This document shows, piece after piece, positions 48,401 to 58,429 of a stretch of DNA of 64,000 bases. The notes below the pieces were generated by a model, which saw only the letters and a program-made list of their open reading frames with translations, was not told the DNA's origin and searched no databases. The stretch comes from Lepidodermella squamata. Lineage: Eukaryota; Animalia; Gastrotricha. A program made the position numbers and the translations under genes. Every line of letters begins with the position of its first letter. The stretch's first letter is position 1. The DNA lies in NCBI GenBank assembly GCA_047495785.1, contig JBLDXI010000085.1, forward strand, positions 124,001 through 188,000, written 5' to 3'.

Positions 48401-50000
48401 AACGTTACTACGTCGTCCAGGGGTGGAGCATGCTTGAAATGGTCCGACAGGGCAACTGTGTACGATTTGGGACTGCCAATGGGTGATGTGGCCGCGTCGG
48501 CAAATGCCTGCCGTGCCTATTTCACCAACGACGATGACCTTGTATGCTTCGTCGGCAAAAACGTTTATGACGATTGTCCTCTAGTTGAAAAGTGCCCAAC
48601 AAGTAAGTAACGTGCTTAATTGAAAAGGGCCGATAAATAATTTAAGCGGAATTTTTCAACTTTTTCCATTTGAACTCTAGCTTTTTGTCCCAATCCGTGT
48701 CAAAACGGGGGAACTTGTGTTGGCGTAGAAATTTGCAGCTGCCAAGCTGGTTGGACCGGATCAACCTGCTCAGCTCGTGAGTTCTGTAGTTTCCAAGAAG
48801 TTTGACTGAGACTTCCTTATTGTAACAGGAATCCCACCAAAATATGAAAGATGCTTCCTGAAGAGCACTGGCGATTTATCTATATGCCGATTGGCACCTC
48901 CGCTGTCACTGGGCTGCCATGAGTTTGAGTACCCGGTAAGGCTAACCAATCATATTAATTCCAGGGTTATTACCTAATTCAAGGGCGGTCGAACTTTTCC
49001 AAGCTACCAATCTTGCGAGAGAGGGGTAAGTGAATGCAAACTTCTTCAAATATGATGATGCTCGGTTGATAAAATAGCCTGTGAGCTACTGCTTTTCACC
49101 CGCAACTGCCGACTTCAATTGTCGCTTTGGTGAATGCAACGTCGGCGAGAAACGGGTAAATCAATATTTTATACCTAAATTCCTGAATTAATTTGATTGA
49201 TTTCAGATCAAAATCTTCTCCAGCTCCCGATTTTTCGCAGGCGAGAATTTAGTGGCATGCCGTAATCTGGCTTCACATGTAACATAGTTCCCATTCTTTT
49301 AAACTCAGCGAACCCTTTTTTATCACCAGATGAAATACTATCGGTGGTCCAGCTCAAACTTCACGAAAATCGCCTGCCGACCAACAAGTGGCTATAAGAC
49401 TAGAGAGGTTAATTCGGATTCGATCATCAATGTTCTATGTCATTGTTCACGTTTCTCTTGCAGGTCCTAAGCGGCGTTTACCCAGATCGGGCAAGTTGCC
49501 TCGCAAGTAAGGATATAGATTTTCGCAGATCCGAATGACGTTTCATTTTCAGACACAATCGCCGAACAGCCCGTGGTTCGCTGCTACAAGAATTCGAATG
49601 GTAAATTCCAGACCTGTCGACCAGATTGCCTCAATGACGAATTCCAGGTAACAAATGCTTCCATAATTTTTTGAAAATAAATATATTTTCATTATGATTC
49701 CAGAATGGCCCGAAATATTTTTTCAAAAATCTAGCTGTTTGTCTGAAAGGGGTTTGGACTTTCGCGGTAATTTGTTACAATTGCAAATGATTTTCTGATA
49801 TTTCAGGGTGCCAGGCTGTGTAAGCGTAATCGCAAGCAAAATTATTGCACAGGAACGAACAGATCATGCAAGAAACAGGTATTCTTTACTTATCTTTCTA
49901 ATTTACTGAAGTTGGTCGTATTTTCATTATACAGATCCGAATTTTCGGCACATCTGACCTATTCGCCGATAATCTGGCAGCGTGCCAAGCAACCAGCTAA
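42463..50000 (+). CDS. Astacin (M12A) metalloprotease: signal, short propeptide, catalytic domain, EGF, CUB, kringle-like, EGF, five 4-Cys modules
   Basis: Spliced HEIGHALGM|EHEQSRTDRD, Met-turn YDSVMHY, CWSYIG, CQNGGY..CLCPEGLGGDFCE, CGG..ITSPGYPN..CNWWI, ECR..GRDYEG..CLKWS..NACR, CPNPCQNGGTC; ends ..ADNLAACQATS* at 50000. Confidence 0.9.
43300..43400 (-). mobile_element. tRNA-derived SINE head, copy 1 (astacin intron)
   Basis: Reverse strand GTAGATGGCTTAGTGG (A box) ... GATTCAAATCC (B box); no proper cloverleaf. Confidence 0.55.
44027..44110 (+). mobile_element. tRNA-derived SINE head, copy 2, internally deleted and inverted relative to copy 1; followed by (ATTAA)n to ~44180
   Basis: gtagatggcttagtggtgagagagg..gagaacgatggttcaaatccctcagccttc. 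Confidence 0.55.
45413..45833. mobile_element. hAT-type MITE (421 bp) in astacin intron
   Basis: 27-bp TIR CATGTGACGTAGATAGGACGCCGCACT; perfect 8-bp TSD ACTATTGG at 45405-45412 and 45834-45841. Confidence 0.9.
47184..47338. mobile_element. Short MITE with ~28-bp TIR
   Basis: catgagacgtaccaggacgccgaggctt / aagcctcggcgtcctggcacgtctcatg. Confidence 0.65.
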
Positions 50001-51143: not shown

Positions 51144-53406
51144 ATAATAATAATCTCATTTTTTTTAAATTGACCTCGCCTAGACCACCGGTCCGATTTA
51201 GATCGGTCCGTTTACGAACCCGTTCACTGTTTTCATCACGGAAAAAAAGAAAATATTCCAGATGATTCTGGCGGTACATGCGTCCAAAAAACAAAAAGCT
51301 ATTTCGAGCTATTCGACTTACGACTTACTCGAAAACAACCGTAACGTACCATTTCTGTCTAGTCGGACTCTATTAATAGCTTCACCATGTTGTTTTCCTA
51401 TAAGCATGCCATGATTCTGCGTGATCACTTTTTTATTTCATTCATTCATTTTATTTATTTTATTTGAAAAAATGAAGCAGTTAGTTGCTGTTACACTACT
51501 TCTCAGTTTCGTAGCCTTATCCCGTGGAATTGTAAGTGGCTTCTATTTTTATCAACTCTTCACCATCTAAAAGCATATGCTTTCAAGGACCCGGAGCTTG
51601 AAGATGTTCTCTGGCAATTGAACGATGCGATTTTTGCAAATCATGGTCTTCCACCGGTAAATTTCCGAGAAATATCGCCATTATGTGTAATGCCCATTGT
51701 TTTCTAGGCTGACCGCAGTGTCCCACTGAAGCTATGCGGCGTTCCAGATATGGATACCGCGCAAGCCAAACTGAGGCGACAACTGGCAATCGCTGATGAC
51801 GAGCCATTTGTGGCCGGAGTGAATTTGGCTGCCAATCTCTGGGAATTTCCTATCAAATACAAACTCAGCGAAGCATACAGTTAGTTGAACGGTTATCCAA
51901 TTTTCTCGCTCCTATCAGTCTAATTATTCTCAACATATTTTGTCCCATGATATAATCCATAGCGAAAGGAACGGCCAGAGTTACCACTCAAGCTAAAAGG
52001 CCATTCCTTTCTCTATGATTATTTACACCAGAACAAAAATCACCCAAATTTATCTACCAAAAGCATGAATTTAGTTTCGGTATCTGAATTCGTTTCAGTA
52101 GATCTGCATTTTTGTAGATGAATTAAGGTAATTTTGGGCATGATTCAGATAAATGTTTAAAATCGGCGAATCAGAATACTTACAGGGCCCTAATTAAGGG
52201 GATACCACAAGGTAAAAGAACCACCCTAATTAGGGTGATTTTTTTCTGTGTAGTGAGTAAGAACAAGTACCCGGTAGGCCTAACTCGTTATAACACTGAT
52301 TAAATAATAACAATTGTTCGTTCAAGGGCACTCGAACGTTTCCAAGTTATCAATCTTGCGAGAGGGGCGTAAGTAATTGGCAACTGATTCAAATATGAGA
52401 ATATTCTGCTAATTTAACAGGCTGTGAGCTACTGCTATTCCCCTGGAGCGGCTGATTTTACTTGCCGCCTTGGAGACTGCAAAAGCAACGAAAAACGGGT
52501 AAAATCAAATCTACCTTTTTATGAATATCTGAAATATTTCGATTGATTCCAGATCAAAATCTTTTCCAGCTCTCGCTTTTTCGCCGCTGAGAATCTGATG
52601 GAATGCCGTAATCTGGCTTCACTGGTAACATAGTTCTCCGTGTCATTTGAACACATCGAGGCTATTGATCCCTCCAGATGAAATACTATCGTTGTCGCAA
52701 CTCAACGAATACATCGAATATCGCTTGCCGACCGACTAAAGGCTGTGCGACTGGAGAGGTTAACTTTAATATTCCACCATGTTTCTTGTTCTTATTAATA
52801 TTTTTACAGCTCTAAAGTGGCGTTTACTCGAATCAGGCTAGATGCCTAAAAAGTGAGGACTATCTTTGCATTCCAAGCTTACAAATGGTAATTTTGTTTC
52901 CAGGTACGTCCGCTGATCAGCCTGTAGTTCGTTGCTACAAGAAAATGAATGGTGGCTTCGTAACATGCCGCCCCGTTTGCCAAAATGACGAATTCGAGGT
53001 GGGATTGCGTCGTTAATTTTCCGAAAGAGCATGTAATTTAATTTTGATTTCAGAATGGCCCGACGTATTTCTTCAAAAATCTGGCTGTTTGCATACATTT
53101 CTTTCCTTTCTCTGAAATTCATGATATATTTCAGGGTGCAAGGCTGTGCAAGCGTAATCGTCTGCAGAAATACTGCATTGGCTCGAATATATCCTGTAAA
53201 AAACAGGTAAAAATAGCAATCTCTCTCTATTATAAGCTATATATGTTAACTTTGCCTGTGACAGATCAAGATTTTCGGATCATCGGACCTTTTCTGCGTA
53301 TCGATTTTCGAATTCTAAGGATTTTTAAAATTTAATACTTGTGTGGAGCGTTCTCCCACTTATTTTATTCAACGTCGTATCAACTTCAAGCACTATCGTC
53401 TTTTCA

Positions 53407-54831
53407 ATGCAAGCTGGGCGTCGACATGGCGAGCATCGACGGGTGTCCTCGAATCCAGGACAAGGTCAAAAAGAAAATGACCTGACCCAGGACGAGAGCG
53501 GTCGAAAGTCCAACCCCGACAACGGCTCGAGCCAGACCGGAGTGCCCAGCAGTCAGTCGCGTGGCAGTCATTCAACAAAACCACAAAAACAACAAAATCA
53601 AAACAAGCACGACGTGAAACCAAATAAGTTCGCAGCGATTGATGGAAATGACGATATAAACTGTGGTACGTGTAAAAAACAAGTAAATATCACTGACCCG
53701 CATACTAGCTGCTTTGTTTGCGACAAAAATTTTCATGATGTATGTGCCGATGTTAAGGTATCGTACGCTAAGGCAATCGCTAAAAACAAAAATATCATAT
53801 ACTTGTGCGATGACTGTATGGACAATATTAGCGTGTGTAAAAAACCATCTCTCGCCGACACGCTTGATGATACGAATAATTGCGTCTCTAACCAAGAACT
53901 GAGTACTCACGATTTACCTACTATTATGTGGGCTGGGGTGGGCTCATTTACCGAACTCGGTCTAAAATCACGAAAAATTGCCGGTAATGGCGACTGTGTT
54001 TTTTCATCTTGTTGCGATCAAGCTTTAGGCACCGTAGCATTTTCTCAGCAACTACGCCACGAGGTACACAAGGAAATTACGGGAAACTTGGATCACTATC
54101 TAGCATTTGTTGATGATGTCAATGACGTCAGCAGAAAACGGTTCCTTCTCGAACTTGAGAAATTCGTTCGACCCGGTTACTGGCACGGGCCATTGGGTGA
54201 CTGCATTTTACCAGCGGTTGCCGCTACGCTTGGACGTAATATTATTGTACATGACTACGAGGGCCAGTTCACAGTAGTAAATTGTAACAAGAACGAATTG
54301 GTTGTTGACGCGCCTCAAATTCACGTGCTGAGGTCAAATGACCACTATGATAGCCTAAGACTTGATGACTCAGACCAACCGAATGAATTTCATTTAAACC
54401 TGATAAAGTGTGCTACTAACAAAAAGCCGTCACAAGTTCAGAAGGTTCAGAAAGCTAGCGATTTTCCGGAGGGCTTTGATCCGAAAAAGGTCGAACCATT
54501 TGGAAAGATCTGTCACGACTGTGGGGATATTCTTCCGAGGCAGCCGCCTTCTTCTTTTAGCGCATTTATGAAAAATATCGCACCTTATATAACAAGAATT
54601 ACTTCGCCTCCTACTCGTTCTTCCATTTATTCCGTCTCGACTTCTTTCAAACCGCCTAGTTACACGATAACACCATCACCTACTGTTTCAAACAAGCCGG
54701 TCGGGCATGAGCCTCAGCCAAACCCGACGATTCAATTTCCTTATTTTCTTCCCTTTCTTCCCTACTTCGCCCCCTATTTCCAACAACCTAATTTTAATTC
54801 TGTGGCGTGTAGTGAAAATTTTCGAAAATAG
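53407..54831 (+). CDS. LINE ORF1: PHD finger plus OTU-like cysteine protease domain
   Basis: C4HC3 PHD CGTC..CFVCDKNFHDVC..YLCDDC (~53662-53817). OTU motifs RKIAGNGDCVFSS..DQ, GYW.G, LGRNIIVH, NDHYDSL (~53965-54360). First ATG at 53407. Confidence 0.8.
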   Translation: MQAGRRHGEHRRVSSNPGQGQKENDLTQDESGRKSNPDNGSSQTGVPSSQSRGSHSTKPQKQQNQNKHDVKPNKFAAIDGNDDINCGTCKKQVNITDPHTSCFVCDKNFHDVCADVKVSYAKAIAKNKNIIYLCDDCMDNISVCKKPSLADTLDDTNNCVSNQELSTHDLPTIMWAGVGSFTELGLKSRKIAGNGDCVFSSCCDQALGTVAFSQQLRHEVHKEITGNLDHYLAFVDDVNDVSRKRFLLELEKFVRPGYWHGPLGDCILPAVAATLGRNIIVHDYEGQFTVVNCNKNELVVDAPQIHVLRSNDHYDSLRLDDSDQPNEFHLNLIKCATNKKPSQVQKVQKASDFPEGFDPKKVEPFGKICHDCGDILPRQPPSSFSAFMKNIAPYITRITSPPTRSSIYSVSTSFKPPSYTITPSPTVSNKPVGHEPQPNPTIQFPYFLPFLPYFAPYFQQPNFNSVACSENFRK

Positions 54832-57717
54832 GAACTGGGCGCCCCTACTTGTTCTGTTAACTTATCTCAGATTGATTTCTTCTACTGCAATGCTAATTCA
54901 ATAGAGCAAAAAAGTGATCTACTCTTATCTAGAATCTTATCGTACGAGAACGTGCCGCAAGTTGTAATTGTGGCTGAAACAGGCTTCAAGAAAGGAAAAA
55001 ATACCATTCATCAATTGACCAACTTAAATTACAATTCGTTCTGTGTTAATAGGCCTGATAACAGGCGTCTTGGTGGTTCAGGTCTGTTCATTCATAATTC
55101 TCTTAATCCTCTTAAAATCGCCGAATTTAACTATGATGGGTTCGTTGAGAGTGTGACGTGTGACTGTACGACGTCTGAATCTAAATTTCGCATCGTTGCG
55201 GTTTATTTCTCTCCAAATTCGCCTAGTAATGCTATGTCTCCATTTTGCAATTATCTCGAAAAAATGATCGATACAAAAATCGATTGTTTACTTGTTGGCG
55301 ATTTTAATCTCCCTGGGTTTGACTGGAAAACGTATACCAATCGTAAAAACCTAAAATATAAAGGCTTTGCTGAGTTTATGTTAACAAATAACTTGAAGCA
55401 ATTGGTTACGGGTATCACGAGACCTAAAAGTAAAAATCTCTTGGATCTTATTATTACGCGACATTCCGAATTAGTCTCGAATATCAAAATCGAAGAACCG
55501 CTAGCCGTAAAATGTGACCATTGTGTTCTCACTTTTAAAATCAATCAATCTTTCTCGTTTAGCAATCCTATCAACTCTATCAAATCAAAATTTAGCTTCT
55601 ACAAGGGTGACTACGCCAGTTTCTCTGCATTTATTTCTTCCTTCGAATGGGAAACATTATTTCGCGGCTTTTCTACCGTGGATTTATGCTATTCTTTCGT
55701 CATCTCCGTTCTTTATTCGGGTATAAAATATTTTATTCCAATTAAAACAGTTTTCAAATCGCCTCGCAGAGTGCCCTGGGAAACTTCAGAACTGCGACGG
55801 CTCTACAACCGTAAACAGCGCATGTTCAATAACTACAAAAAATCCGGCTATAAAAATAGTGAGTATGGTAAATTTAGAGTCGCAGCCTGTCTTCACGATC
55901 AGCTTTTTGCTAAACTGAAGCAGAGGTTCGAGGAGGATCTCATTAAATCTAAATCCATAGCCAAACTATTTGAATATATGAATAATCGGTTCAAATCACG
56001 TGACTCAGTGCCGCCTTTAAAATCGAATGAAGAGACATTTTCCGATAATTCGAAAAAAGCGGAAATCTTAAAAAACTCATTTTCTCTTTCCTATAATTCT
56101 AAATCGTATGATACAAAACAGCAATTTTCTAAAATTAGCGACTGTCTTCAAAATATACCTTTCACATCAGATTCTATATTACCTTTCATGCTTAGAATAA
56201 AGGAGAAGGCTTCGGGTGGCCCTGATAATTTACCGGCCATACTCATTCGTAAACTAGCTCATGTCCTATCCTTTCCTATATCTATAATTTTTTCTCGCTG
56301 CTTTATTGAAGGCCAGATCCCGTTAATATGGAAAAGGGCGAACGTTACCCCGATTTTTAAACGCAACGGTGACTCGTCCGATCCATCCAACTATAGGCCT
56401 GTTTCATTAACTTGTCTTTTTTGTAAGATTCAGGAAGCTATTGTTAAGCATCATCTTTTAAATTTCCTTTACCGCAATAAACTTATACCTTTTAATCAAT
56501 TCGGCTTCTTGTCAAGGCGCTCTAGTGAGACGCAACTTCTTTCTTGTATTATTGATTGGTTGAGAGCGTTAGACCTTGGTTTTGTTGTGGATATTATTTA
56601 TTTAGACCTATCCAAGGCATTCGACACAGTTCCTATTTCGCTTCTTCTATCTCAACTTCTTAAAATTAATATTGTTGGCTGTGTATTTACTTGGCTTAAA
56701 GAGTTTCTCTCTGATCGATATTTTCGCGTTGTGACTGGTGGGGCGTTTTCAGAATGGGCGCCAGCTCCATCGGGCGTGCCGCAGGGTTCGGTTCTGGGAC
56801 CCACGTTATTTATTATTTTCACTATATTTTCTAATGACGTCCTTACTAGTGCTATAGCCAAATATTTTGCGGATGATACGAAACTATACAAGGTGATACA
56901 CTCTATTAATGACTGTCTTTCTTTACAACATGACCTTGATAATATCACAACGTATTATAATACTAATGGGCTTTCCGTGAATCCTAAAAAGTGCGTGGTT
57001 CTTAGATTGGGCAAAAGTGCTATCGATTTTGAATACACTATAAATGGTAATAAATTGGTGCTCGAAAAAGTTGTTAAGGATCTCGGTGTATATATTGACA
57101 ACCAGCTAAATCTTTCGTATAATACTTCTCAAGTAATTGACAAATGTGCCCGAGTTACTAATGCTATATTTAAATGTTTTAAATCAAAAGAAATGCGACT
57201 GAAAGCCTTTAAAACACACGTTATACCTCTTGTTGAGTATTGTCCTGCTGTAGCTTCTCCTATTTTACTTTCCGACATAGATGACCTAGAAAGTGTGCAA
57301 ATTAATTTTACTAAAAAATTGTTATGTCCTGGCTCTTTGTTTTATACTTCTGTCGACGGTTTTAACTATGATGAACGACTGAAAAAACTTGACTTGCGAA
57401 AACTAGAGGAACGTCGTCTCATCAGGGATATTTGTCTCTGTCACAAAATGTATCAAAATACTGTTGATCTAAATTTTTATGATTTTTTTTCTATTTCTAG
57501 TCGCCGTAGAGCAGTTGCTCATGAAATTAGTTTTATACCTACAAATATTGATTCTTATAAATATTCCTTTGTTAGGCGTGTGAGGCCTCTCTGGAATTCA
57601 ATACCTACTGATTATATTAATAATTCTCATAATAACTTTAAAAACTATGTTAAACAGCTCGACCTTAATAACTATTTGACGTCAGTAGTGAGGCGCCATG
57701 ACATTTTGTACCTATGA
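54832..57717 (+). CDS. LINE ORF2: APE endonuclease plus reverse transcriptase; same frame as ORF1, open from the codon after the ORF1 TAG, no initiating ATG
   Basis: APE motifs FFYCNANSI, VIVAET, GGSGLFI, VYFSP, VGDFN, LDLII, CDH. RT motifs NYRPVSL, QFGF, YLDLSKAFDTV, GVPQGSVLGP, FADDTK, KDLGV. Confidence 0.92.
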   Translation, partial: ELGAPTCSVNLSQIDFFYCNANSIEQKSDLLLSRILSYENVPQVVIVAETGFKKGKNTIHQLTNLNYNSFCVNRPDNRRLGGSGLFIHNSLNPLKIAEFNYDGFVESVTCDCTTSESKFRIVAVYFSPNSPSNAMSPFCNYLEKMIDTKIDCLLVGDFNLPGFDWKTYTNRKNLKYKGFAEFMLTNNLKQLVTGITRPKSKNLLDLIITRHSELVSNIKIEEPLAVKCDHCVLTFKINQSFSFSNPINSIKSKFSFYKGDYASFSAFISSFEWETLFRGFSTVDLCYSFVISVLYSGIKYFIPIKTVFKSPRRVPWETSELRRLYNRKQRMFNNYKKSGYKNSEYGKFRVAACLHDQLFAKLKQRFEEDLIKSKSIAKLFEYMNNRFKSRDSVPPLKSNEETFSDNSKKAEILKNSFSLSYNSKSYDTKQQFSKISDCLQNIPFTSDSILPFMLRIKEKASGGPDNLPAILIRKLAHVLSFPISIIFSRCFIEGQIPLIWKRANVTPIFKRNGDSSDPSNYRPVSLTCLFCKIQEAIVKHHLLNFLYRNKLIPFNQFGFLSRRSSETQLLSCIIDWLRALDLGFVVDIIYLDLSKAFDTVPISLLLSQLLKINIVGCVFTWLKEFLSDRYFRVVTGGAFSEWAPAPSGVPQGSVLGPTLFIIFTIFSNDVLTSAIAKYFADDTKLYKVIHSINDCLSLQHDLDNITTYYNTNGLSVNPKKCVVLRLGKSAIDFEYTINGNKLVLEKVVKDLGVYIDNQLNLSYNTSQVIDKCARVTNAIFKCFKSKEMRLKAFKTHVIPLVEYCPAVASPILLSDIDDLESVQINFTKKLLCPGSLFYTSVDGFNYDERLKKLDLRKLEERRLIRDICLCHKMYQNTVDLNFYDFFSISSRRRAVAHEISFIPTNIDSYKYSFVRRVRPLWNSIPTDYINNSHNNFKNYVKQLDLNNYLTSVVRRHDILYL

Positions 57718-58095
57718 CTGTTCACTTCGCCACTGTTGTTCGCGAACAAGAAGAAGAATAAAGAATAAAGAATAAAGAATTTTCGCCGATAATTTTGCAG
57801 CTTGCAAAGCAGCTAACATATGAAGAAGAGTTGGTTCATCAAGTGAACGCAAACAAAATAATGGGACTTGCTCATATTAATGGCTAATTAACGCTGAATG
57901 GTAAATTTGAATTACATAACTTCTAAGCTGAATCTGTTGTGCTTCGCATCTACTTCTTGCCGCAGAATTGCTATTATATTTTTCGCATAATATGTGATAT
58001 GTCGCCGAGGCCGAAGTTGCCCGAAAATCTCACGAAAAGGTTAATTTCAGCAATATAGCAACTATTATTCCAGATCTTACACGAAAAAGGCCAAC

Positions 58096-58167
58096 TGGAG
58101 GCATCGGGGATTGAACCCGAGACCTTCACAATGCGAATGAGACGCTCTACCACTGAGCTATGCCCCC
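58096..58167 (-). tRNA. tRNA-Ala(CGC)
   Basis: GGGGGCATAGCTCAGTGGTAGAGCGTCTCATTCGCATTGTGAAGGTCTCGGGTTCAATCCCCGATGCCTCCA; G3:U70 pair; one T-T mismatch in the anticodon stem. Confidence 0.85.
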
Positions 58168-58247
58168 TAGGCTTGAAAGTGCATAAAAGGCTCACATGGT
58201 AACTGAAAGATTAAATTGTATTCCAGCAGCTCAAAATAACGCTTGAA

Positions 58248-58319
58248 AGGTCTCATCGAGAATCGAACTCGAGTCGCTGGATTAAGAATTCAGAATGCTA
58301 ACCGCTACACCAAGGGACC
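58248..58319 (-). tRNA. tRNA-Gln-type body with anticodon CTT (probable pseudo-tRNA)
   Basis: GGTCCCTTGGTGTAGCGGTTAGCATTCTGAATTCTTAATCCAGCGACTCGAGTTCGATTCTCGATGAGACCT; two acceptor-stem mismatches and one anticodon-stem mismatch. Confidence 0.65.
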
Positions 58320-58346
58320 CTCTCGAAAGCTGATTTCGAAATGATC

Positions 58347-58429
58347 AACGTCAGCCAGAAGTCGAACCCGGATCGGTTGCTTCAAGCCTGCTTGGAAGAC
58401 AACCATGCTGACTGTTACACCACTGACGA
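58347..58429 (-). tRNA. tRNA-Gly(TCC)-derived gene with an 11-nt insert after the anticodon (probable pseudo-tRNA)
   Basis: TCGTCAGTGGTGTAACAGTCAGCATGGTTGTCTTCCA[AGCAGGCTTGA]AGCAACCGATCCGGGTTCGACTTCTGGCTGACG; D-loop GG lost; 1:72 mismatch. Confidence 0.6.

What the first reader, a model, noticed from the sequence alone, without database searches (positions are those of the whole stretch)
53407..54400. LINE ORF1 encodes a PHD finger fused to an OTU-like deubiquitinase
Seen: a PHD finger followed by a compact OTU-type domain with candidate catalytic Cys (IAGNGDCVF, TGT at 53995; canonical is GDGNCLF, so D and N are swapped) and His-x-Asp (NDHYDSL, CAC at 54343). No RRM/zinc-knuckle or esterase is evident. 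Established: PHD fingers occur in CR1-group proteins; OTU proteases are used by viruses against ubiquitin-based defence and occur in some Helitron-group elements. Inference: an intact, recently inserted LINE carries a chromatin reader coupled to a ubiquitin eraser, either as counter-silencing or as a self-processing protease for an ORF1-ORF2 polyprotein.
Basis: partly seen in the sequence, partly recalled or inferred. Interest (0 to 1): 0.8.

Follow-up and report, generated by a model that had tools for sequence, protein, structure and literature searches.

The report
LINE whose ORF1 carries an OTU deubiquitinase
An intact, recently inserted CR1-like jumping gene in this small animal's genome keeps its group's usual chromatin-reading PHD finger, but in place of the usual RNA-binding or esterase module it has a ubiquitin-removing (OTU) protease domain, which I found in no paper I could search and no relative I could fetch.

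Summary
ORF1 (53407-54831, 474 aa) has a C4HC3 PHD finger (residues 86-137) and an OTU-fold domain (about 181-325).

- **OTU evidence:** human OTUD3 matches by sequence (E 1.6e-5). The AlphaFold model matches OTUD3 at Z 16.8, rmsd 1.9 A over 131 residues.
- **Catalytic residues:** The usual DGNC motif reads NGDC.
- **The element:** 4.49 kb, with a 5-bp duplication (TTTTC), an (AAGAATA)n tail and an intact endonuclease-RT ORF2.
- **Relatives:** the nearest ORF2 relatives (about 30% identity) carry PHD-plus-RRM-like or esterase ORF1s, so it is CR1-like. None of them has an OTU.
- **ORF1 relatives:** none closer than about 30% identity turned up among 1.8 billion representative proteins.
- **Prior art:** a 2014 survey of Jockey-superfamily ORF1s lists no protease. 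Ubiquitin- or SUMO-type proteases are known in other non-LTR elements (Ulp1 in NeSL/Utopia, Josephin in Dualen, OTU on a Symbiodinium ORF2p) and in Helitrons and Ginger1.

I call it a new variant of a known kind. Function is inferred: most likely an active deubiquitinase acting on host conjugates, less likely a self-processing protease. The scan has separately noted OTU domains on other transposon types in this genome, and LINEs that start with the spliced leader; this copy does too.

The parts
53290..53294 (+). 5' copy of the 5-nt target-site duplication TTTTC (or microhomology)
   Evidence: A contig in run X1 joins 53289 to 57780 without the element, with 5 letters fitting both sides. The sequence is TTTTC at both places.
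53295..53326 (+). 5' end of the element: a 32-nt stretch that behaves like the animal's spliced-leader exon
   Evidence: Run X5 has a word depth of 26685 in the bin holding this stretch. Its contigs diverge into many different sequences after 53325-53331. Run X4 has a contig that fits 53293-53327 only. Scan notes s1-395075 and s1-384467 report the same for other LINEs of this genome.
53327..53406 (+). 5' UTR without any upstream ATG
   Evidence: 53407 is the only ATG between 53290 and 53410.
53407..54831 (+). ORF1, 474 aa, ending in TAG at 54829-54831
53662..53817 (+). PHD finger (C4HC3, residues 86-137), Pygopus-like
   Evidence: The eight zinc ligands are invariant against five library relatives, four of which reach Pfam's PHD cut-off. 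Pygopus PHD is the best solved PHD match.
53947..54381 (+). OTU-fold cysteine isopeptidase domain (residues about 181-325): Cys197 at 53995-53997, His313 at 54343-54345, Asp315 at 54349-54351, Asn194 in place of the usual Asp
54382..54828 (+). C-terminal tail of ORF1: Pro/Ser/Thr-rich, then aromatic-Pro-rich (FPYFLPFLPYFAPYF), with no recognisable domain
   Evidence: Pfam finds nothing. tblastn finds nothing against the relatives' loci.
54832..57717 (+). ORF2 in the same frame as ORF1, open directly after the TAG. It holds an APE endonuclease (from about 54865) and a reverse transcriptase (about 56383-57006, FADD motif). The first in-frame Met lies 135 codons after the stop, inside the APE domain.
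57718..57779 (+). Short 3' UTR ending in (AAGAATA)n, 57754-57779
   Evidence: No significant RNA fold.
57780..57784 (+). 3' copy of TTTTC

Best explanation
This is a full-length, recently transposed CR1-like LINE of 4.49 kb.

Its ORF1 keeps the group's N-terminal Pygopus-type PHD finger. Where its nearest relatives have a coiled-coil/RRM-like or esterase module, it has an OTU-family cysteine isopeptidase domain.

I take the OTU to be catalytically competent. The Cys sits at the start of a helix. The His lies in the HYDS strand motif, and the Asp two residues after it could serve as the third catalytic residue.

The most likely role is a deubiquitinase acting in trans on host ubiquitin (or ubiquitin-like) conjugates for the element's benefit. 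Candidate substrates are:
- ubiquitin marks on chromatin at or near the integration site, with the PHD finger supplying chromatin contact;
- the element's own proteins, rescued from proteasomal turnover;
- ubiquitinated ribosomal proteins. From my own knowledge, not tested here, OTUD3 and yeast Otu2, its nearest structural relatives, remove such marks.

Shown: the architecture, the fold, the catalytic residues, the integrity and youth of the element, and its CR1-like kinship. Inferred: activity, substrate and benefit.
For: - **OTU homology and fold:** (Z 16.8 to OTUD3).
- **Catalytic residues:** Cys197 is invariant and His313 nearly so among the relatives. Cys197 opens helix 123-133 of the model and His313 opens strand 239-244, the usual OTU placement as far as I know.
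- **PHD finger:**
- **Element intact and young:** empty-site contigs and a perfect 5-nt duplication; both ORFs open; read depth rises from 5' to 3' (80 to 745), as expected for 5'-truncated copies.
- **Second ORF1 variant:** a 1145-nt contig differs at 6 sites. Four are synonymous, including both sites inside the OTU domain, and none touches the catalytic codons.
- **Other organisms:** pieces of ORF1 also occur in a differently labelled organism, B.
- **CR1-like kinship:** the nearest ORF2 relatives carry PHD + RRM-like, esterase or Tudor-like ORF1s and no OTU.
- **Precedent:** deubiquitinase or SUMO-protease domains are recurrent transposon passengers (PMC2836005, PMC4067079, PMC4640811, PMC8557442, PMC13405545).
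Against: - No activity data exist.
- The Pfam OTU score is below the curated cut-off.
- The Asp three residues before the Cys, annotated as catalytic in many OTUs, is Asn here.
- The PHD finger has Tyr and Asn where its LINE relatives have the Trp residues next to ligand positions, so histone binding is uncertain.
- The evidence for selection rests on six substitutions.
- Only about three ORF1-bearing copies are suggested by depth, so the fusion could be young and not yet tested by selection.
- ORF1 has no recognisable RNA-binding module, which is unusual for a working LINE.
Confidence: 0.55

Rival explanations
1. The OTU is a cis-acting processing protease. ORF1 and ORF2 share one frame separated by a single TAG. 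Readthrough would make a PHD-OTU-APE-RT polyprotein that the OTU cuts, as OTU-fold proteases do in arteriviruses and tymoviruses (my own knowledge) and as was proposed for Helentron OTUs (PMC4067079).
For: - ORF2 opens directly after the TAG in the same frame. It has no in-frame Met before residue 135, which lies inside the endonuclease domain.
- The residues just after the stop read E-L-G-A-P, loosely like the LxG(G/A/S) sites of viral deubiquitinase-type proteases (the comparison is from my own knowledge).
- ORF1 lacks an RNA-binding module, which a fusion to ORF2 would make dispensable.
Against: - There is no stable RNA structure after the TAG (z +1.0) and no readthrough context that I recognise.
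- A three-residue motif is expected by chance.
- Termination-reinitiation, as in other LINEs, explains ORF2 translation without a polyprotein.
- There is no data on protein products.
Confidence: 0.15
2. The OTU is a passenger. A fragment picked up recently from a host gene or another transposon is catalytically dead or irrelevant to retrotransposition, and is kept only because the copies are young.
For: - Few ORF1-bearing copies (depth about three times that of neighbouring unique contigs).
- The non-canonical NGDC motif.
- No relative with the same architecture anywhere I could search.
Against: - The domain is only about 30% identical to every OTU found among 1.8 billion representatives. That argues for long independent evolution, not a fresh capture from a conserved host gene. 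The host's own proteome may be missing from that library.
- The catalytic Cys and His and the whole fold are intact.
- Two variants, plus pieces in a second labelled organism, keep the frame open.
- Substitutions are mostly synonymous.
Confidence: 0.12
3. The domain is a non-catalytic ubiquitin-binding module (a pseudo-deubiquitinase) that recruits the element's particle to ubiquitinated chromatin or cargo.
For: The Asp-to-Asn change at Cys-3 and the swapped motif. Pseudo-enzymes are common among deubiquitinase folds (my own knowledge).
Against: The nucleophile Cys and general-base His are both kept, as is Asp315 in the HxD arrangement. Asn is an accepted third residue in some active OTUs, such as OTUB2 and OTULIN (my own knowledge).
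Confidence: 0.08

Closest known systems
CR1/L2-lineage LINE ORF1 proteins with a PHD finger (type III ORF1; Kapitonov and Jurka 2003 as cited in PMC8557442; survey in PMC4120745)
   Same: N-terminal Pygopus-like C4HC3 PHD finger. In that survey the PHD's best solved matches are also Pygopus entries 2vpb and 3zpv. ORF2 has an APE endonuclease and RT, and the element ends in a microsatellite-like tail. The nearest ORF2 relatives fetched here have PHD or esterase ORF1s.
   Different: Those ORF1s follow the PHD with a coiled coil and RRM, or with nothing, or carry an esterase. None in the survey or in my sample has a protease. Here the second module is an OTU domain, and no RNA-binding domain is detectable.
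Cysteine proteases of the ubiquitin/SUMO system in other non-LTR retrotransposons: Ulp1-like in NeSL and Utopia-1_TSP (PMC4640811), Josephin-like in Dualen (PMC8557442, PMC9977147), OTU at the N-terminus of a Symbiodinium ORF2p (PMC13405545)
   Same: A retrotransposon-encoded papain-like isopeptidase presumed to interfere with host protein modification or to process the element's protein.
   Different: Those sit in single-ORF or ORF2 proteins of restriction-like-endonuclease or Dualen-type elements, or of a protist LINE. They are not paired with a PHD finger in a separate ORF1 of a CR1-like animal LINE. Only the Symbiodinium case is an OTU.
OTU domains of DNA transposons: Helitron/Helentron (PMC4067079) and Ginger1 (PMC2836005); also Ginger1-9_HM with Ulp1 + PHD
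   Same: The same protease family rides on mobile elements. Protease-plus-PHD pairings already exist in Ginger1. Helentrons also carry a CR1-derived endonuclease, so gene flow between these two element types is documented.
   Different: They have a different transposition mechanism and a different protein context. I could not test whether this OTU derives from one of them, because all OTUs found are about equally distant.
Cellular OTUD3 / yeast Otu2 and nairovirus vOTU
   Same: Best sequence and structure matches. They share the minimal OTU core, the Cys-helix and the His-x-Asp strand.
   Different: 22-23% identity over the structural alignments. The motif is NGDC instead of DGNC. There is a 'GDxxLPAxA' variant of the central helix motif, shared with a few uncharacterised library proteins, one of which lies next to a MULE transposase. 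No UBA or other cellular accessory domains are present.

Membership tests
OTU cysteine protease (Pfam PF02338) | Sequence match to the family model above the curated cut-off | tested here: not met
   18.9 bits against a gathering score of 23.3, E 0.0023, covering model positions 2-119 of 128.
OTU cysteine protease (Pfam PF02338) | Significant homology to bona fide members | tested here: met
   OTUD3 (4bou) at E 1.6e-5 by phmmer. The best library hit is E 2.5e-7 for a library of 1.8 billion proteins. All 19 aligned hits are themselves Pfam OTU proteins, best E 2.7e-39.
OTU cysteine protease (Pfam PF02338) | OTU fold | tested here: met
   Model pLDDT is above 90 over most of the domain. Foldseek gives E 8e-9 and TM 0.80 to OTUD3, and all 50 top rows are OTU proteases. 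VIA-align gives Z 16.8, rmsd 1.9 A over 131 residues.
OTU cysteine protease (Pfam PF02338) | Catalytic Cys and His at the conserved positions | tested here: met
   Cys197 is invariant and His313 nearly invariant in the alignments. The codons were verified.
OTU cysteine protease (Pfam PF02338) | Acidic or amide third catalytic residue | tested here: inconclusive
   The Asp at Cys-3 is replaced by Asn194. Asp315 is present two residues after the His, as in the HYDS motif of the relatives. Which of the two acts cannot be told without coordinates or an assay.
OTU cysteine protease (Pfam PF02338) | Isopeptidase activity on ubiquitin or a ubiquitin-like protein | not testable with these tools
   Needs a biochemical assay.
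PHD finger | C4HC3 zinc-ligand pattern with PHD spacing | tested here: met
   C86, C89, C102, C105, H110, C113, C134 and C137 are invariant against five relatives.
PHD finger | Match to the Pfam PHD model above its cut-off | tested here: not met
   No PF00628 hit at E up to 1. There are weak FYVE (E 0.006), C1_2 and zf-HC5HC2H hits. Of the five library relatives, four reach the PHD cut-off (27.6, 30.8, 27.7 and 28.3 bits) and P0018 (22.4 bits) and P0022 (19.1 bits) fall below it.
PHD finger | Cross-brace treble-clef fold | tested here: inconclusive
   The model of the finger alone has pLDDT 71. The best rows are FYVE (E 6e-3) and Pygopus PHD (E 2e-2, TM 0.57-0.62). The fold class fits, but the scores are weak for so small a domain.
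CR1-like (Jockey-superfamily) LINE | ORF2 with an N-terminal APE endonuclease and an RT, and no restriction-like endonuclease | tested here: met
   Exo_endo_phos_2 at E 1.6e-11, RVT_1 at E 4.8e-24. FADD motif present.
CR1-like (Jockey-superfamily) LINE | Short tandem-repeat 3' tail rather than poly(A), and a short target duplication | tested here: met
   (AAGAATA) x 3.9 at 57754-57780. A 5-nt duplication.
CR1-like (Jockey-superfamily) LINE | Kinship with elements that carry PHD or esterase ORF1s | tested here: met
   ORF2 relatives at E 1e-85 to 1e-105 (P0028, P0029, P0036, P0040) and P0049 (E 1.9e-73) sit behind GDSL-esterase (L007), PHD (L009, L012, L014) or Tudor-like (L011) ORF1s.
CR1-like (Jockey-superfamily) LINE | Placement within the CR1, L2 or Rex1 clade on an RT tree with reference elements | not tested

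The most novel reading that the evidence does not exclude
A LINE has replaced the RNA-binding half of its ORF1 with an active deubiquitinase and works like a small RNA virus. A spliced-leader-capped mRNA is translated through the single in-frame TAG into a PHD-OTU-endonuclease-RT polyprotein. The OTU cuts that polyprotein and also strips host ubiquitin. If the scan's notes of OTU domains on pogo, Mutator, CACTA-type, Helitron-like and Maverick-like elements in this genome hold, this would be one case of convergent recruitment by many transposon classes against one ubiquitin-based host defence.
Probability: 0.1. Interest if true: 0.85.

Novelty: new variant of a known kind. Interest (0 to 1): 0.58.

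Why it matters
LINE ORF1 proteins are usually treated as RNA chaperones or packaging proteins. The accepted list of ORF1 modules is RRM, CCHC, coiled coil/Tnp22, PHD and esterase.

An apparently active element whose ORF1 is a chromatin reader plus a deubiquitinase, with no detectable RNA-binding domain, adds a sixth module. It also raises the question of how much of the ORF1 job is really RNA binding.

It adds a CR1-like animal LINE to the set of mobile elements that carry ubiquitin- or SUMO-system proteases: NeSL, Dualen, Helitrons, Ginger1 and MULEs. That strengthens the case that ubiquitin-dependent host control of transposition is a general pressure.

If the scan's notes on other OTU-bearing transposons in this genome hold, this animal would be a natural system to find what that pressure is. 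The domain is small and easy to express, so the central claim can be tested at the bench in days.

Tried and rejected
- **Word-index protein search with ORF1:** nothing.
- **ESM Atlas feature search:** nothing usable.
- **tblastn of ORF1 against phage records:** nothing, and a poorly chosen collection.
- **The search for related loci with ORF1 in metagenome contigs:** no relative. With ORF2, only one decayed 43%-identical RT fragment, L005, with no usable ORF1.
- **Searches for further copies in the window:** none.
- **RNA structure:** none after the ORF1 stop codon or in the 3' UTR (z +1.0 and +1.4). No Rfam family in the element; only the three neighbouring tRNAs matched.
- **2A site:** I considered one at 'SSNPGQ' near the N-terminus and rejected it, because there is no Pro after the Gly and no D(V/I)ExNPGP context.
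- **'RLGGS' in ORF2 as a ubiquitin-like cleavage site:** rejected, because it falls in what I recall as a conserved Gly-rich endonuclease motif.
- **Origin of the OTU (cellular or transposon-borne):** pairwise scores are all 27-33% identity and 40-59 bits, so a tree would not be informative and I built none.
- **Active-site geometry:** I could not inspect it, because model coordinates are not exposed to scripts.
- **Consensus or repaired sequence:** none was built.
Full report
**What is there**

The window holds one copy of a two-ORF element on the + strand.

- **ORF1** runs from the ATG at 53407 to a TAG at 54829-54831 (474 aa).
- **ORF2** opens in the same frame directly after that TAG and runs to 57717. 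It has an Exo_endo_phos_2 endonuclease (E 1.6e-11) and an RVT_1 reverse transcriptase (E 4.8e-24) with an intact FADD motif.
- **The 3' UTR** is 62 nt long and ends in (AAGAATA) x 3.9.

**Boundaries and age**

I laid public contigs on 53100-57900.

- One contig of run X1 joins 53289 directly to 57780, with five letters (TTTTC) fitting both sides.
- Two further contigs, in X1 and X2, join 53287 to 57785/57786 with 7-8 other letters between.
- The flanks in these contigs are only about 87% like the window. They are therefore paralogous copies of a repeat into which the LINE inserted, not an empty allele.
- This sets the element at 53295-57779 (4.49 kb), with a 5-nt duplication or microhomology.
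- Depth rises steadily from about 80 over ORF1 to about 745 near the 3' end, the signature of 5'-truncated copies.
- ORF1 depth is about three times that of the neighbouring unique contigs (27-30). Few copies therefore carry ORF1.

**The PHD finger**

- Residues 86-137 give C-x2-C-x12-C-x2-C-x4-H-x2-C-x20-C-x2-C.
- All eight ligands are invariant against five library proteins found by exhaustive HMMER search. Four of these reach Pfam's PHD cut-off.
- One of them, P0020, is followed on its contig by an endonuclease ORF, so it is itself a LINE ORF1.
- The best solved PHD matches are Pygopus PHD fingers. These are the same structures that Metcalfe and Casane report as top hits for CR1 and L2 ORF1 PHDs (PMC4120745).
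- Pfam's own PHD model does not reach significance on this sequence.
- The fold search with the finger alone gives only weak FYVE and Pygopus rows. I call it a PHD finger on the ligand pattern and on homology to LINE PHDs, not on fold scores.
- The Trp residues that its relatives have next to the fourth ligand pair are Tyr and Asn here. Its histone-reading ability is therefore open.

**The OTU domain**

- Pfam OTU scores just under its cut-off (18.9 against 23.3 bits). Every other test is positive.
- phmmer against solved structures finds the human OTUD3 OTU domain at E 1.6e-5 across residues 181-325.
- An exhaustive search of 1.84 billion representative proteins gives 25 hits. Twenty of them align to this segment, and all 19 I aligned and scanned are Pfam OTU proteins.
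- An AlphaFold2 model of residues 75-340 has pLDDT above 90 over most of the domain.
- The model matches OTUD3 with Foldseek E 8e-9 and TM 0.80. All 50 top rows are OTU proteases. The second aligner gives Z 16.8, rmsd 1.9 A over 131 residues.
- The nearest ESM Atlas clusters are OTUD3-like.
- Cys197 (TGT 53995) is invariant and opens a helix in the model. His313 (CAC 54343) is nearly invariant and opens a strand. Asp315 follows in the HYDS motif. The canonical DGNC reads NGDC, so the Asp at Cys-3 is an Asn.

**What ORF1 lacks**

- Pfam finds nothing in the last 134 residues. They are Pro/Ser/Thr-rich and then aromatic-Pro-rich.
- The N-terminal 80 residues are polar and basic.
- There is no RRM, CCHC knuckle, coiled coil or esterase.

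**Kinship**

- ORF2 relatives in the large protein collection reach E 1e-113 at about 30% identity.
- I fetched contigs for seven of them and read the upstream ORFs:
  - L007 has a GDSL-esterase ORF1.
  - L009, L012/L013 and L014 have an N-terminal PHD followed by a coiled coil and an RRM-like block.
  - L011 has a Tudor/MBT-like start and a PHD-like finger.
  - L015 keeps only the RRM-like end.
  - L006 has no upstream ORF on its strand.
- Esterase and PHD ORF1s are the hallmark of CR1-like elements (PMC4120745; Kapitonov and Jurka 2003 as cited in PMC8557442). I therefore file the element as CR1-like without a reference tree.
- tblastn with this OTU finds nothing in any of these loci. In this small sample the OTU stands where relatives have the coiled-coil/RRM or esterase module.

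**Conservation**

- In run X1, a 1145-nt contig covering 53651-54795 differs from the window at six sites.
- Four of the six are synonymous, including both sites inside the OTU. The two replacements (S142G, H370Q) lie in linkers. No catalytic codon is touched.
- Under neutrality about a quarter of changes would be synonymous. Four or more of six has a binomial probability of about 0.04. This is a weak hint of constraint, no more.
- A differently labelled organism (run X2) holds ORF1 pieces 54101-54317 and 54468-54740 with 7 and 3 differences.

**Is it known?**

- The 2014 survey of Jockey-superfamily ORF1s lists PHD, RRM, CCHC, Tnp22 and esterase. It contains neither 'OTU', 'protease' nor 'ubiquitin'.
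- Full-text searches for OTU with ORF1, non-LTR, CR1 or LINE gave no CR1-, L2- or Jockey-type case.
- Related precedents do exist:
  - Ulp1-like proteases in NeSL and Utopia-1_TSP (PMC4640811).
  - Josephin-like proteases in Dualen (PMC8557442 and PMC9977147).
  - An OTU domain at the N-terminus of a Symbiodinium ORF2p in a 2026 preprint (PMC13405545).
  - OTU in Helitrons, Helentrons and Ginger1, including a Ginger1 with Ulp1 + PHD (PMC2836005 and PMC4067079).
- Helentrons also carry a CR1-derived endonuclease. Exchange between these two element types has therefore happened at least once.
- Repbase Reports and Dfam could not be searched, and that is the main gap in the novelty claim.

**How it most likely works**

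- I commit to an active deubiquitinase, or ubiquitin-like isopeptidase, acting in trans for the element. The PHD finger would give chromatin contact.
- Candidate substrates:
  - ubiquitin marks at target chromatin;
  - the element's own proteins;
  - ubiquitinated ribosomal proteins. From my own knowledge, OTUD3 and yeast Otu2, the nearest relatives, act on the 40S subunit. The preprint PMC13405545 notes that a viral OTU relieves stalling-linked protein loss.
- The self-processing idea stays alive because ORF1 and ORF2 share a frame across one TAG, and ORF2 has no in-frame Met before residue 135, which lies inside the endonuclease. However, there is no RNA structure after the stop, and the 'ELGAP' after it is too short to count.
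- A dead passenger domain, or a ubiquitin-binding pseudo-enzyme, cannot be excluded.

**Seen in passing**

- The first 32 nt of the element (53295-53326) behave like the animal's spliced-leader exon.
  - A run guessed to be RNA has a word depth of 26685 there. Its contigs leave the window after 53325-53331 into many different sequences.
  - 53407 is the first ATG after this stretch.
  - The scan has already reported LINEs of this genome that begin with the leader (s1-395075, s1-384467). It has also suggested that the animal is a gastrotrich (s1-421969). I did not test the species.
- The scan also notes OTU domains on pogo, Mutator, CACTA-type, Helitron-like and Maverick-like elements of this genome. 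I did not check these. If they hold, the LINE is one case of a wider pattern worth a joint analysis.

**Verdict**

- It is a new variant of a known kind.

Noticed in passing
window 53295-53326: The element starts, right after the 5-nt duplication, with a 32-nt stretch that acts like a spliced-leader exon. One run (RNA by guess) has a word depth of 26685 there, and its contigs branch into many different sequences after 53325-53331. So the copied RNA was probably trans-spliced. The scan has reported the same for other LINEs of this genome.
   Followed up: partly
window 54829-54960: ORF1 and ORF2 are in one frame, split by a single TAG. The first in-frame Met of ORF2 is 135 codons downstream, inside the endonuclease domain. 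An out-of-frame ATG at 54890 opens only a 4-codon ORF. No stable RNA fold follows the stop. This is already listed by the scan as s1-374211.
   Followed up: partly
window 53100-53289 and 57780-57899; also 49798-49881: The DNA flanking the LINE is itself a repeat. Contigs of two runs join the two flanks without the LINE at about 87% identity, and an 84-nt copy at 80% identity lies at 49798-49881.
   Followed up: no
window 58096-58429, minus strand: A tight cluster of three tRNA genes, Ala(CGC), Lys(CTT) and Gly(TCC), about 320 nt downstream of the LINE. The third scores only 32.8 bits in Rfam.
   Followed up: no
window 53392-53651: A contig joint in run X1 (depth 49) skips or replaces 53393-53650. 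This hints at a variant of the family with a different or missing N-terminal 80 residues before the PHD finger.
   Followed up: no
L003 417-959 and 2699-4813: A metagenomic OTU protein (P0024) shares this domain's 'GDxxL.A.A' motif. It lies 1.7 kb upstream of a 704-aa ORF with a MULE transposase domain (E 3e-5), a probable Mutator-type transposon carrying an OTU.
   Followed up: partly
L011 482-2185: A CR1-like LINE from a marine metagenome whose 567-aa ORF1 begins with a weak Tudor-knot/MBT-like match (E 0.003-0.007) ahead of a PHD-like finger. This may be another unlisted chromatin-reader module in ORF1.
   Followed up: no
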